A stretch of DNA of 63,280 bases, counting the filler, from Octopus bimaculoides (taxonomy: Eukaryota): the NCBI RefSeq assembly GCF_001194135.2. It is 5 parts of 5 records of this genome, joined end to end, with 100 filler letters (N's around TTAATTAATTAA, not from the genome) between each part and the next. Parts side by side here need not be neighbours in the genome. Positions count along the whole stretch, not along the records: positions 1 to 22,760 come from NC_068988.1; 4 more parts are not named here. One strand, written 5' to 3'. Each line of letters starts with the position of its first letter. Position 1 is the stretch's first letter. The position numbers and the translations under genes are program-made. Of the stretch, positions 16,485 through 17,904 are shown piece by piece. A model generated the notes under the pieces. It saw only the letters and a program-made list of their open reading frames with translations. It searched no databases and had not been told where the DNA came from.

Positions 16485-16580
16485 TCCCTCTCACCATGAT
16501 CTGTAGCACGAACGGATCCGGATTTCAGGGTTATTTCCCTTCGTCGGCGTTCGATAGCCACTGATCCTTGGTGAGAGAGA
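16485..16580 (-). ncRNA. Type I hammerhead-ribozyme-like fold (CCGACGA core variant) within a ~346-nt repeat unit
   Basis: Minus strand reads cgaacg-CCGACGA-aggg aaataa ccct-GAA-ATCCGGAT-C-cgttcg. Helix I is 6 bp and extends about 30 bp through internal loops. Helix II is 4 bp, helix III is palindromic, and the triplet is AUC. Confidence 0.75.
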
Positions 16581-17304
16581 CAAAATCTTGGCAATCTTAT
16601 ATCNNNNNNNNNNNNNNNNNNNNNNNNNNNNNNNNNNNNNNNNNNNNNNNNNNNNNNNNNNNNNNNNNNNNNNNNNNNNNNNNNNNNNNNNNNNNNNNNN
16701 NNNNNNNNNNNNNNNNNNNNNNNNNNNNNNNNNNNNNNNNNNNNNNNNNNNNNNNNNNNNNNNNNNNNNNNNNNNNNNNNNNNNNNNNNNNNNNNNNNNN
16801 NNNNNNNNNNNNNNNNNNNNNNNNNNNNNNNNNNNNNNNNNNNNNNNNNNNNNNNNNNNNNNNNNNNNNNNNNNNNNNNNNNNNNNNNNNNNNNNNNNNN
16901 NNNNNNNNNNNNNNNNNNNNNNNNNNNNNNNNNNNNNNNNNNNNNNNNNNNNNNNNNNNNNNNNNNNNNNNNNNNNNNNNNNNNNNNNNNNNNNNNNNNN
17001 NNNNNTTAATTCTCTAAATGAAGTATTAACAGTAACTGCACGATAAAGTGTAGTATATTGCCACTTAAGTGTGGCTGACCCCTAGGGGTGGACGTTAAGC
17101 CAGCTGGAGATGTCCTCCTGGGGCTAAAAGCAACAGTAACATCCACCCCTAGGGGTCAGCCACACTTAAGTGGCAATATACTACACTTTATCGTGCAGTT
17201 ACTGTTAATACTTCATTTAGAGAATTAACATTGCTTGTTTTCACCTTTTCGATATCAGTGAAGAATTTCACTGGAAAAGTAGATATAAGATTGCCAAGAT
17301 TTTG

Positions 17305-17400
17305 TCTCTCTCACCAAGGATCAGTAGCAAGCGAACGCCGATGAAGGGAAATAACCCTGAAATCCAGATCCGTTCGTGCTACAGATCATGGTGAGAGGGA
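17305..17400 (+). ncRNA. Type I hammerhead-ribozyme-like fold (CCGAUGA core variant), second copy
   Basis: cgaacg-CCGATGA-aggg aaataa ccct-GAA-ATCCAGAT-C-cgttcg (17332-17376). Distal helix I segments are gtagc/gctac, gatc/gatc and tctctctcacca/tggtgagaggga. Confidence 0.75.
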
Positions 17401-17904
17401 TAACTTCCCTTGGCAAACAGGACACAGTAGTGTGTCGATAAGCCAGCTGGAGGAGATGTCCTCCTGGGGCTAAAAGCAACAGTAACATCCACCCCTAGGG
17501 GTCAGCCACACTTAAGTGGTAATATACTACACTATATATATATATATATTTATTTATGTATGTATATATGATGGACTCCCTTGTCACTAGACAATGCATG
17601 AAGGTTTGACAATTTCTTACTAAACAACTACACGGATGATTTGTTTATAGTGATCAAATGTTTGTGTACACATAAGATCACTCCCTTCATCAAATTGACA
17701 TTACCTGTCCAGGTTCAACGGGTGCCACATGTCAGATGTTGAAACGATTGCAGAGCAATGTGAAATGAAGTGTTTTGCTGAAGAACACAATGCATCGCCT
17801 GGTCTGGGAATTGAACCCACGATCTAACAATCGCGAGTGCAACACTCTAACCACTAAGCCATGTGTATGTGTGTGTGTATATATATATATATATACATAC
17901 ATAA

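What the first reader, a model, noticed from the sequence alone, without database searches (positions are those of the whole stretch)
16485..17535. ~346-nt hammerhead-carrying tandem repeat: candidate retrozyme (circular-RNA-producing) family with a U4C core
Seen: two oppositely oriented copies of a complete type I hammerhead fold (16485-16580 minus, 17305-17400 plus). Each has 6-bp proximal helix I extending about 30 bp through internal loops, a 4-bp helix II with loop AAAUAA, GAAA, a palindromic helix III (AUCCGGAU in the minus copy, one substitution in the plus copy) and an AUC triplet. A difference between copies in helix I (gtagc vs gtggc) keeps pairing as G-U. The core is CCGANGA rather than CUGANGA in both copies. 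Unit period is 346 bp, no ORF is evident, and the unit is full of small hairpins (gacaca/tgtgtc, ggagga/tcctcc, cagtgaa/ttcactg). Established: metazoan non-LTR retrozymes are tandem repeats of a few hundred nt with one type I hammerhead per unit and yield circular RNAs; Penelope pLTRs carry similar motifs. Inference: this is such a family in an octopus-like genome, possibly undescribed and with a non-canonical core.
Basis: partly seen in the sequence, partly recalled or inferred. Interest (0 to 1): 0.9.

Follow-up and report, generated by a model that had tools for sequence, protein, structure and literature searches.

The report
Hammerhead-like repeat in an octopus-like genome
A short non-coding repeat carries a hammerhead-ribozyme-like RNA fold, one base off the catalytic consensus, and is laid out like a Penelope-type or "retrozyme" retroelement insertion; this is a likely new example of a known kind of element, and neither its catalytic activity nor its spread in the genome could be tested here.

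Summary
The sequence observation holds. Two inverted copies (16485-16603 minus, 17282-17400 plus; 96% identical) each fold as a type I hammerhead. Each has a 6-7 bp proximal helix I extended to about 30 bp, a 4-bp helix II with loop AAAUAA, GAAA, a palindromic helix III, and AUC at the cut site. The core is CCGANGA (U4C).

No Rfam hammerhead model matches, even at E<=10. A model built from four experimentally validated animal retrozyme hammerheads ranks the two copies first and second in the window (17.0 and 16.1 bits). A descriptor with position 4 left free finds only these two sites.

The locus is one head-to-head palindrome: a partial tandem plus an inverted, 5'-truncated copy, ending in (TA)n. 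That is the Penelope-like insertion architecture. The unit has no ORF, 43% GC, and a very stable fold (z = -8.3).

No other copies could be retrieved, so family size, conservation of C4, circular RNA and cleavage remain untested. The published mutational and viroid data read here predict weak activity for U4C. Verdict: probably a retrozyme-like, Penelope-dependent repeat; moderate interest.

The parts
16485..16603 (-). 3' part of the inverted (minus-oriented) copy of the unit. It holds the hammerhead-like hairpin 16485-16580 and ends abruptly at 16485 against an unrelated flank.
   Evidence: Inverted repeat I1 with 17282-17400, 119 nt, 96%; fold -47.5 kcal/mol, z = -7.2.
16509..16553 (-). Hammerhead-like core of the minus copy: helix I 6 bp, CCGACGA (16547-16541), helix II AGGG/CCCU with loop AAAUAA, GAAA (16526-16523), helix III AUCCGGAU, C17 at 16515. 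Predicted cut 16515|16514.
   Evidence: Descriptor hit; best match in the window to the model built from validated retrozyme hammerheads, 17.0 bits, E 0.0036, all pairs standard.
16604..17005 (.). Assembly gap lying inside the inverted copy. The two edges are collinear in the unit; 53 nt, or 53 + 346 = 399 nt, are missing. The second case would hide one more unit and one more hammerhead.
   Evidence: Edge mapping to 17282 and 17228; the estimated gap of 402 is close to 399.
17006..17097 (-). 5' part of the inverted copy. It is 5'-truncated at the unit position equivalent to 17137.
   Evidence: Inverted repeat I2 with 17137-17228, 92 nt, 99%, 39 nt between the arms. It lies within contiguous sequence, so the inverted junction is assembled rather than scaffolded.
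17098..17136 (+). Centre of the palindrome. This is the first 39 nt of the plus-oriented copy and has no inverted partner.
17106..17451 (+). Reference 346-nt unit, plus orientation. It has no ORF and 43% GC, and is highly structured as a circle (-123 kcal/mol, z = -8.3).
   Evidence: Direct repeat D3, spacing 346; circular fold and shuffles; longest open frame 63 aa with no protein relatives.
17305..17400 (+). Hammerhead-like hairpin of the plus copy. Helix I extends about 30 bp through internal loops and continues further into UUGCCAAG (17291-17298) / CUUGGCAA (17411-17418).
   Evidence: Fold -47.2 kcal/mol, z = -8.2; circular fold.
17331..17377 (+). Hammerhead-like core of the plus copy: helix I 7 bp, CCGAUGA 17338-17344, helix II 17345-17358, GAAA 17359-17362, helix III AUCCAGAU 17362-17369, C17 at 17370. 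Predicted cut 17370|17371.
   Evidence: Descriptor hit; model R1 16.1 bits, E 0.0066, second best in the window.
17436..17535 (+). Start of a second head-to-tail unit (about 0.28 unit). The element ends at about 17533-17535.
   Evidence: blastn 17093-17191 versus 17436-17537, 94% with a 3-nt indel; D3 98%.
17533..17569 (.). (TA)n microsatellite abutting the 3' end of the plus copy. It is a possible insertion target.
   Evidence: Tandem Repeats Finder. A (TA)n target bias for Penelope-like elements is stated in PMC8557442.

Best explanation
This locus is an insertion of a short, non-coding, hammerhead-bearing retroelement of the animal 'non-LTR retrozyme' / Penelope-like-element (PLE) dependent kind. 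The unit is 346 nt. The insertion has about 1.28 head-to-tail units in the plus orientation (about 17093-17535). Next to it lies an inverted, 5'-truncated copy (17097 down to 16485, interrupted by the assembly gap).

Inferred mechanism, by analogy with validated retrozymes:
1. Multimeric transcripts of such units cut themselves after the AUC triplet (17370|17371 on the plus strand; 16515|16514 on the minus strand).
2. Two adjacent motifs probably pair through the palindromic helix III to form a double hammerhead.
3. The unit-length RNA, with 5'-OH and 2',3'-cyclic phosphate ends, is circularised by a host tRNA ligase.
4. The circle is copied and integrated in trans by a PLE reverse transcriptase/endonuclease. 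This step also produces the partial-tandem and inverted-copy layout.

The motif departs from the hammerhead consensus at U4 (C) and at pair 10.1-11.1 (A-U). I therefore expect these particular copies to cleave weakly or not at all.

Shown here: the sequence, the folds, the layout, the absence of an ORF, and the similarity to validated retrozyme hammerheads. Inferred: transcription, cleavage, circles, and mobilisation by PLEs.
For: - Type I architecture with the canonical metazoan dimensions (definition in PMC4209133).
- The top two matches in the window to a covariance model built only from four experimentally cleaving retrozyme hammerheads (coral, mussel, two axolotl; sequences from the supplement of PMC7229834). 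Scores are 17.0 and 16.1 bits with all pairs standard; the next best are 12.7 and 11.6 bits with several non-standard pairs.
- Few shuffled windows produce such a motif: 3 to 12 of 400.
- The helix III palindrome AUCCGGAU resembles ACGCGCGU (mussel) and ACAGUACUGU (coral) in the validated elements. A homodimer cofold of the minus-type domain gives a double hammerhead with an 8-bp intermolecular helix III.
- The unit is 346 nt, 43% GC and has no ORF. Its circular fold is -123 kcal/mol, z = -8.3.
- The layout matches PLE insertions: partial tandem, inverted 5'-truncated copy upstream, (TA)n at the end, and an assembly gap at the repeat (PMC8557442).
- Two further PLE-type minimal hammerhead motifs with canonical cores lie in the same window, against 0.026 expected. 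Hammerhead-bearing elements are therefore present in this genome region.
- The hairpin keeps CpG at observed/expected 0.83-1.08, against 0.29 in the rest of the unit and 0.37 in the window.
Against: - No Rfam hammerhead family matches, even at E<=10 on slices of 184-231 nt.
- The core has C at the conserved U4 and A-U at the most conserved helix II pair.
- All single mutants of the CUGA turn had low activity in a mutational scan (PMC9901934).
- Only about 1.28 units are present, with one sense motif per strand, so this locus alone could not release a unit-length RNA unless the gap hides another unit.
- No second locus was found. The window has none, and scans of metagenome, prokaryote-genome and viral collections and a protein-space search found nothing. 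Those collections may not contain this organism at all.
- The two copies end at different unit positions (equivalent to 17400 and to 17191), and no target-site duplication is seen.
- The five differences between the copies spare the core and break only one pair, but that pattern has a chance probability of about 0.12.
- At genome scale, motifs with one core mismatch are expected by chance in the hundreds or more (my extrapolation).
- No reverse transcriptase or GIY-YIG remnant is in the window.
Confidence: 0.6

Rival explanations
1. It is a dead relic of a canonical hammerhead repeat. The family's active copies carry CUGANGA and G10.1-C11.1. This locus descends from one mutated copy that was duplicated in inverted orientation, or inserted once, so the 'U4C core' is an inactivating mutation and not a variant ribozyme.
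For: - Both copies are arms of a single palindrome and differ at only 6 of 211 aligned positions, so they share ancestry.
- CUGA-turn mutants have low activity (PMC9901934).
- U4C 'considerably decreases activity in vitro' (PMC3088659).
- Rfam models give no match.
Against: - C4-G5 is a CpG. In this CpG-depleted sequence the mutational drift runs from CCGA to CUGA, not the reverse. Three other CpGs have decayed in the plus copy while C4pG5 is kept in both copies.
- If the two arms arose in one insertion event, the inserted RNA already carried C4 and was nevertheless mobilised.
Confidence: 0.4
2. It is a chance hammerhead look-alike inside a hairpin-rich repeat of another kind, such as a foldback or MITE-type DNA transposon or a local inverted duplication. 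The long hairpin is the real feature, and its apical junction happens to resemble a hammerhead with one mismatch.
For: - Helix I comes for free once a 30-bp hairpin exists.
- Motifs with one core mismatch arise in 1-3% of shuffled 21-kb windows, which implies many chance hits per genome.
- There is no Rfam match.
- The locus is a roughly 1-kb palindrome.
- Rfam returns only generic hairpin (miRNA-family) hits, all far below threshold.
Against: - Features outside the descriptor also fit: the perfect 8-nt palindromic helix III, the 4-bp helix II with a 6-nt loop, a 6-bp proximal helix I followed by an asymmetric internal loop, and the AUC triplet.
- The two sites are the best-scoring in the window for a model built from independent, validated sequences.
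- The palindrome has no symmetric ends. The unit runs 135 nt past the right arm and then repeats head-to-tail.
- No target-site duplication and no transposase are present.
Confidence: 0.2
3. It is a fragment of the terminal repeat (pLTR) region of an autonomous Penelope-like element, not an independent non-autonomous retrozyme family.
For: - The partial tandem plus inverted 5'-truncated copy and the (TA)n end are PLE hallmarks (PMC8557442).
- Retrozymes and pLTRs are reported to be related in sequence (bioRxiv 10.64898/2026.07.22.740005).
- PLE-type minimal hammerhead motifs occur elsewhere in the window.
Against: - No reverse transcriptase or GIY-YIG coding remnant is next to the repeat or anywhere in the window.
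- The motif has the 'canonical' dimensions of retrozyme hammerheads. It lacks the minimal PLE form: long helix II, an extra base after A9, and a short helix I.
Confidence: 0.2
4. The inverted arrangement is an assembly artefact: a palindromic contig end or a wrongly oriented contig next to the gap. The true structure would then be a simple tandem array.
For: - The gap lies inside the repeat.
- The same scaffold shows a clear gap artefact elsewhere: 14062-14325 and 14385-14648 are 100% identical on either side of a 59-N gap.
- PLE-type repeats are known to disturb short-read assemblies.
Against: - The inverted junction 17006-17228 lies within contiguous sequence.
- The arms are not identical (99% and 96%), whereas a turn-around artefact would give 100%.
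- The left contig joins the minus copy to a unique flank.
Confidence: 0.1

Closest known systems
Animal non-LTR retrozymes (Cervera & de la Pena 2020, PMC7229834), e.g. the roughly 350-nt Mytilus galloprovincialis element
   Same: - One type I hammerhead-type motif per non-coding unit of a few hundred nt, with low GC.
- A palindromic helix III and a highly structured unit.
- The host is also a mollusc.
- The unit length of 346 nt lies in the reported 170-400 nt range.
   Different: - The core has C4 instead of U4, and A-U instead of G-C at 10.1-11.1.
- Only 1.28 units are present here, against dimers to large multimers.
- An inverted copy is attached.
- No primary-sequence similarity exists outside short chance words.
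- Circular RNA and cleavage are untested.
Penelope-like elements and their pLTR hammerheads (PMC4209133, PMC8557442)
   Same: - Partial-tandem layout with an adjacent inverted 5'-truncated copy.
- (TA)n at one end, and an assembly gap at the repeat.
- Hammerhead motifs on opposite strands a few hundred bases apart are reported for PLE remnants.
   Different: - No RT/GIY-YIG ORF is present.
- The motif is of the canonical type (helix I 6 bp, helix II 4 bp), not the minimal PLE type.
Satellite-DNA hammerheads of newts/salamanders, Schistosoma Sm-alpha and cave crickets
   Same: - Type I motif in repeats of about 330-350 nt.
- A weak, palindromic helix III that favours a dimeric (double-hammerhead) active form.
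- An internally looped extension of helix I.
   Different: - Those carry the consensus core and occur in long arrays with demonstrated cleavage.
- Here the core deviates, and neither an array nor activity is shown.
Natural U4C hammerhead variant of a viroid (cited in PMC3088659 as Ambros & Flores 1998)
   Same: The same core substitution occurs in a natural molecule, and it is tolerated in vivo.
   Different: - That case is a sequence variant of an infectious plant RNA with a type III motif.
- This one is DNA-encoded in an animal repeat, type I, with a second deviation at 10.1-11.1.
- I could not read the primary paper because it is not held in the library.

Membership tests
Hammerhead ribozyme (type I) | Three helices around a junction, with helix I open and helices II and III closed | tested here: met
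   Folds, descriptor, and the full-length alignment to model R1 with all 13 pairs standard.
Hammerhead ribozyme (type I) | Core strand C3-U4-G5-A6-N7-G8-A9 | tested here: not met
   Both copies read CCGANGA (17338-17344; 16547-16541). The canonical descriptor gives 0 hits in the window.
Hammerhead ribozyme (type I) | G12-A13-A14, the A15.1-U16.1 pair, and H17 at the cleavage site | tested here: met
   GAAA, then AUCC(A/G)GAU, then C.
Hammerhead ribozyme (type I) | G10.1-C11.1 closing pair of helix II (the most conserved pair after 15.1-16.1, per PMC3088659) | tested here: not met
   It is A-U in both copies (AGGG...CCCU).
Hammerhead ribozyme (type I) | Match to the curated Rfam hammerhead covariance models | tested here: not met
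   No hammerhead family is listed, even at E<=10 on short slices.
Hammerhead ribozyme (type I) | Site-specific self-cleavage | not testable with these tools
   Needs in vitro transcription or RNA-end mapping.
Animal non-LTR retrozyme | Head-to-tail tandem repeats (two or more units) of about 150-450 bp | tested here: inconclusive
   The period of 346 nt is in range, but only about 1.28 units are present. The gap may hide one more unit in the inverted copy.
Animal non-LTR retrozyme | Non-coding unit with low GC | tested here: met
   The longest open frame is 63 aa, with no relatives. GC is 43%.
Animal non-LTR retrozyme | Many genomic copies forming a family with a conserved ribozyme | not testable with these tools
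   No other copy is in the window. No eukaryotic genome collection was available, and scans of other collections were empty.
Animal non-LTR retrozyme | Expression as unit-length linear and circular RNA | not testable with these tools
   No transcriptome access.
Penelope-like element | ORF with a reverse transcriptase and (in the EN+ clades) a GIY-YIG endonuclease | tested here: not met
   No such ORF or remnant was found among frames of at least 55 aa. A Pfam scan of the ten most complex frames gave only a weak Mos1 HTH hit. Shorter decayed remnants are not excluded.
Penelope-like element | Partial-tandem (pLTR) layout, often with an inverted 5'-truncated copy upstream | tested here: met
   description in PMC8557442.

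The most novel reading that the evidence does not exclude
Cephalopods carry a retrozyme family whose master copies have a natural C4 (and A10.1-U11.1) hammerhead that still cleaves and yields roughly 346-nt circular RNAs. Cleavage may occur only as a double hammerhead, with C4 stabilising an inactive monomer fold: C3-C4-G5 pairs with the CGG of loop 3 in the minimum-free-energy structure of the minus copy. That would be a DNA-encoded hammerhead family with a non-consensus uridine turn.
Probability: 0.15. Interest if true: 0.6.

Novelty: new member of a known kind. Interest (0 to 1): 0.35.

Why it matters
If genome-wide data confirm it, this would extend hammerhead-bearing retrozymes to cephalopods. 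I found no description of them there in the open literature searched. Repbase, Dfam and subscription journals were not searchable, so the element may already be catalogued.

If C4 proves to be the family state and the RNA still cleaves, it would be a natural test case for how tertiary contacts or dimer formation buffer a core mutation that cripples laboratory hammerheads. It would also show that descriptor searches fixed on CUGANGA and the Rfam models miss real elements.

If C4 is only a mutation of this locus, the finding is an ordinary decayed repeat.

Tried and rejected
- **Rfam.** I searched the whole piece and two short slices at E<=10. No hammerhead or other ribozyme family appeared. The only hits were generic hairpin (miRNA-family) matches far below their thresholds: mir-5444 at 20 bits against 90, and MIR904 at 56 bits against 80 on the 17052-17182 palindrome. 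I reject these as hairpin look-alikes.
- **Other copies.** Exact-pattern scans with the helix II/core word and with a 20-mer from the thrice-repeated part of the unit found nothing in the metagenome, prokaryote-genome or viral collections. These collections may hold no DNA of this organism, so the result says little.
- **Protein-space trick.** I joined the open frames of the unit into one query, hoping to reach spurious ORFs called on other copies. No hits.
- **Similarity to validated retrozymes.** There is no primary-sequence similarity of the unit to the four validated retrozymes.
- **Selection test.** The five differences between the copies fit the structure, but the chance probability is about 0.12, so the test is not significant.
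- **An apparent compensatory pair.** RNAalifold paired N7 with a loop-3 base as a compensatory change. Both changes are CpG decays in the plus copy, and the pair belongs to a non-hammerhead conformer. I do not count it as evidence.
- **tRNA search.** ARAGORN found no tRNA genes.
- **Pfam input.** I scanned selected frames instead.
- **Primary papers.** Two papers on U4 effects were not held in the library.
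Full report
**What is in the sequence**

The piece is AT-rich (35% GC), CpG-depleted (observed/expected 0.37), full of microsatellites and interrupted by N gaps. 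It looks like a short-read scaffold of an animal genome.

Between 16485 and 17535 the repeat finder gives three relations:
- an inverted repeat, 16485-16603 versus 17282-17400 (119 nt, 96%);
- a second inverted repeat, 17006-17097 versus 17137-17228 (92 nt, 99%, 39 nt between the arms);
- a direct repeat, 17106-17191 versus 17452-17537, at a spacing of 346 nt (98%).

blastn of the region against the piece finds nothing else. Together these describe one head-to-head palindrome centred near 17117:
- To the right lies a plus-oriented copy of about 1.28 units (about 17093-17535), which runs into a (TA)n microsatellite.
- To the left lies a minus-oriented copy that starts 5'-truncated (17097 corresponds to 17137), crosses the gap, and stops at 16485 against unrelated sequence.

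**The gap**

The gap edges map to unit positions 17282 and 17228. Both sides belong to the same unit, in the same orientation and in the right order. The missing part is 53 nt, or 53 + 346 = 399 nt, which is close to the estimated 402. A further unit, with a further motif, may therefore be hidden there.

The inverted junction at 17097/17098 lies inside contiguous sequence, and the arms differ at 6 of 211 positions. A simple turn-around artefact is therefore unlikely. The scaffold does contain an obvious gap artefact elsewhere.

**The motif**

Both 96-nt hairpins are far more stable than their shuffles: -47.2 and -47.5 kcal/mol, z = -8.2 and -7.2.

The plus copy reads: GCGAACG / CCGAUGA / AGGG-AAAUAA-CCCU / GAAA / UCCAGA-U / C / CGUUCGU. 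This is a type I hammerhead layout with:
- a 6-7 bp proximal helix I, followed by an asymmetric internal loop and about 20 further pairs;
- a 4-bp helix II with a 6-nt loop;
- a helix III that is a perfect 8-nt palindrome in the minus copy (AUCCGGAU);
- an AUC cleavage triplet.

These are the dimensions that Cervera and de la Pena give for canonical metazoan type I hammerheads: helix I 6 bp, helix II 4 bp, and helix III 1-2 bp capped by a small palindromic loop (PMC4209133).

Two positions depart from the consensus in both copies.

**Is it more than chance?**

- My own RNAmotif-style descriptor finds no canonical hammerhead in the piece. With position 4 left free it finds exactly these two sites.
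- In 400 dinucleotide shuffles of the piece, no shuffle gave a canonical hit. Twelve gave a hit with at most one core mismatch, and three gave one with helix I >= 6 bp and helix II >= 4 bp. The motif is therefore unusual for a 21-kb window. By my extrapolation, however, one-mismatch motifs would arise by chance hundreds of times in a genome of gigabase size.
- Rfam's hammerhead families give no match, even at E<=10 on slices of 184-231 nt.
- To see whether that was only a matter of sensitivity, I built a covariance model from four hammerheads that were shown to cleave: coral, mussel and two axolotl retrozymes. Their sequences are printed in the supplement of PMC7229834. One loop base of one axolotl sequence was removed so that the alignment held.
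- With filters off, the two copies are the best two matches in the piece: 17.0 and 16.1 bits, E about 0.004-0.007, aligned over the full model with every pair standard. The next matches score 12.7 and 11.6 bits with several non-standard pairs. This score is modest and fits a real but off-consensus motif.

**The unit**

- A virtual monomer from cut site to cut site is 346 nt with 43% GC. As a circle it folds at -123 kcal/mol, z = -8.3. Helix I continues into a long stem that closes a branched domain of small hairpins.
- The longest open frame is 63 aa. A joined query of all open frames has no relative in the protein collection.
- No primary-sequence similarity to the four validated retrozymes exists beyond chance words.
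- A homodimer cofold of the minus-type domain gives the classical double hammerhead with an 8-bp intermolecular helix III.
- In the monomer, the hammerhead secondary structure costs 6-8 kcal/mol over an alternative in which C3-C4-G5 pairs with loop 3.

**What it most likely is**

The layout has four features: a partial tandem, an adjacent inverted 5'-truncated copy, a (TA)n end, and an assembly gap. This is what Craig et al. describe for insertions of Penelope-like elements (PMC8557442). Hammerheads on opposite strands a few hundred bases apart were noted for PLE remnants.

Animal non-LTR retrozymes are non-coding, low-GC repeats of 170-400 nt with one type I hammerhead per unit. They are expressed as circular RNAs (PMC7229834) and are argued to derive from PLE terminal repeats (bioRxiv 10.64898/2026.07.22.740005).

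The window has no reverse transcriptase or GIY-YIG remnant among frames of at least 55 aa. It does contain two further hammerhead-core motifs with canonical CUGANGA, an extra base after A9 and a helix II directly followed by GAAA, at 9386-9410 (+) and 11482-11509 (-). The expectation is 0.026 per shuffled window, and two or more occurred in 1 of 1000 shuffles. Those features are the PLE 'minimal hammerhead' traits.

I therefore read the locus as an insertion of a retrozyme-like, PLE-dependent repeat (confidence about 0.6).

The DNA-transposon-TIR reading fails. The palindrome has no symmetric ends, the unit continues 135 nt beyond the right arm and then repeats head-to-tail, and no target-site duplication is seen.

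**Activity and the C4 question**

The evidence on U4C is limited:
- A natural U4C variant of a viroid 'considerably decreases activity in vitro' yet remains infectious (PMC3088659).
- In a complete single- and double-mutant scan, every mutant of the CUGA turn other than the C:G swap had low activity (PMC9901934).
- The G10.1-C11.1 pair is the most conserved helix pair after 15.1-16.1.

I therefore expect weak or no cleavage for these copies.

Whether C4 is a family trait cannot be decided, because both copies belong to one locus. Two observations lean slightly towards constraint on the hairpin:
- CpG is kept in the hairpin (observed/expected 0.83-1.08), against 0.29 in the rest of the unit.
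- C4-G5 is itself a CpG that survives in both copies, while three other CpGs have decayed in the plus copy.

The counts are small. The pattern of differences between the copies (no core hit, one pair lost) has a chance probability of about 0.12.

As the locus stands, each strand carries a single sense motif. A unit-length RNA could be excised only if the gap hides a second unit in the inverted copy.

**Novelty**

I found no description of hammerheads or retrozymes in cephalopods in the open literature available. Retrozymes are known in molluscs (mussel), and PLEs are recorded in Octopus species. Repbase, Dfam and the genome itself could not be searched.

The finding is best filed as a probable new member of a known kind, with an unproven possibility of a variant core. 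The reasons are that the kind is known and widespread, the array and the family are not shown, and the core deviation is more likely to weaken the ribozyme than to define a new one.

Noticed in passing
window 9386-9410 (+) and 11482-11509 (-): Two further hammerhead-core motifs with the canonical CUGANGA, one extra base after A9, a helix II of 4 and 6 bp, and GAAA directly after it. Helix I is short or degenerate. These are the traits of Penelope-type 'minimal hammerheads'. Expected 0.026 per shuffled window; two or more occurred in 1 of 1000 shuffles. Model R1 scores them 11.6 and 12.7 bits.
   Followed up: partly
window 14062-14325 and 14385-14648: Two 264-nt stretches, 100% identical, lie on either side of the 59-N gap 14326-14384. 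This is almost certainly an unmerged contig overlap, so the gap is spurious.
   Followed up: partly
window 15443-15500: A degenerate (TTAGGG)n run of about 9.5 copies, i.e. an interstitial telomere-like repeat, lies about 1 kb upstream of the element.
   Followed up: no
window 16485-16580, 17305-17400 versus the rest of the unit: CpG observed/expected is 0.83-1.08 in the hammerhead hairpin, against 0.29 in the rest of the unit and 0.37 in the window. Three of the six differences between the arms are CpG in the minus copy and TpG/CpA in the plus copy (17342, 17366, 17141). The other three cluster within 6 nt at the internal loop of helix I (17326, 17329, 17331).
   Followed up: partly
window 17342 and 17366 (minus copy 16543 and 16519): RNAalifold pairs N7 with a loop-3 base as a 'compensatory' change (U-A versus C-G). 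Both changes are CpG decays, and the pair belongs to a non-hammerhead conformer. Probably coincidence.
   Followed up: partly
window 16188-16284 (+) and 17754-17856 (-): Related stretches (70% over 103 nt) with tRNA-like box A/B sequences flank the element on both sides. They look like heads of tRNA-derived SINEs, although ARAGORN calls no tRNA. The minus copy of the element ends in sequence that seems to continue the left one.
   Followed up: partly
window 3722-4186 (+), 897-1196 (+): Decayed DNA-transposon coding remnants. There is a weak Mos1/mariner HTH_48 match at 3722-3952 (E 0.004, below the cut-off). By eye, 3971-4186 looks like a mariner C-terminal fragment and 897-1196 like a pogo/Tigger-type DDE fragment; Pfam confirmed neither.
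   Followed up: partly
window 15869-15951 versus 1-83; 6534-6614 versus 10589-10669: Other dispersed repeats in the piece: a 90% inverted match of 83 nt at the two places, and an 88% direct match of 81 nt next to (GAT)n runs. These are unclassified repeat families.
   Followed up: no
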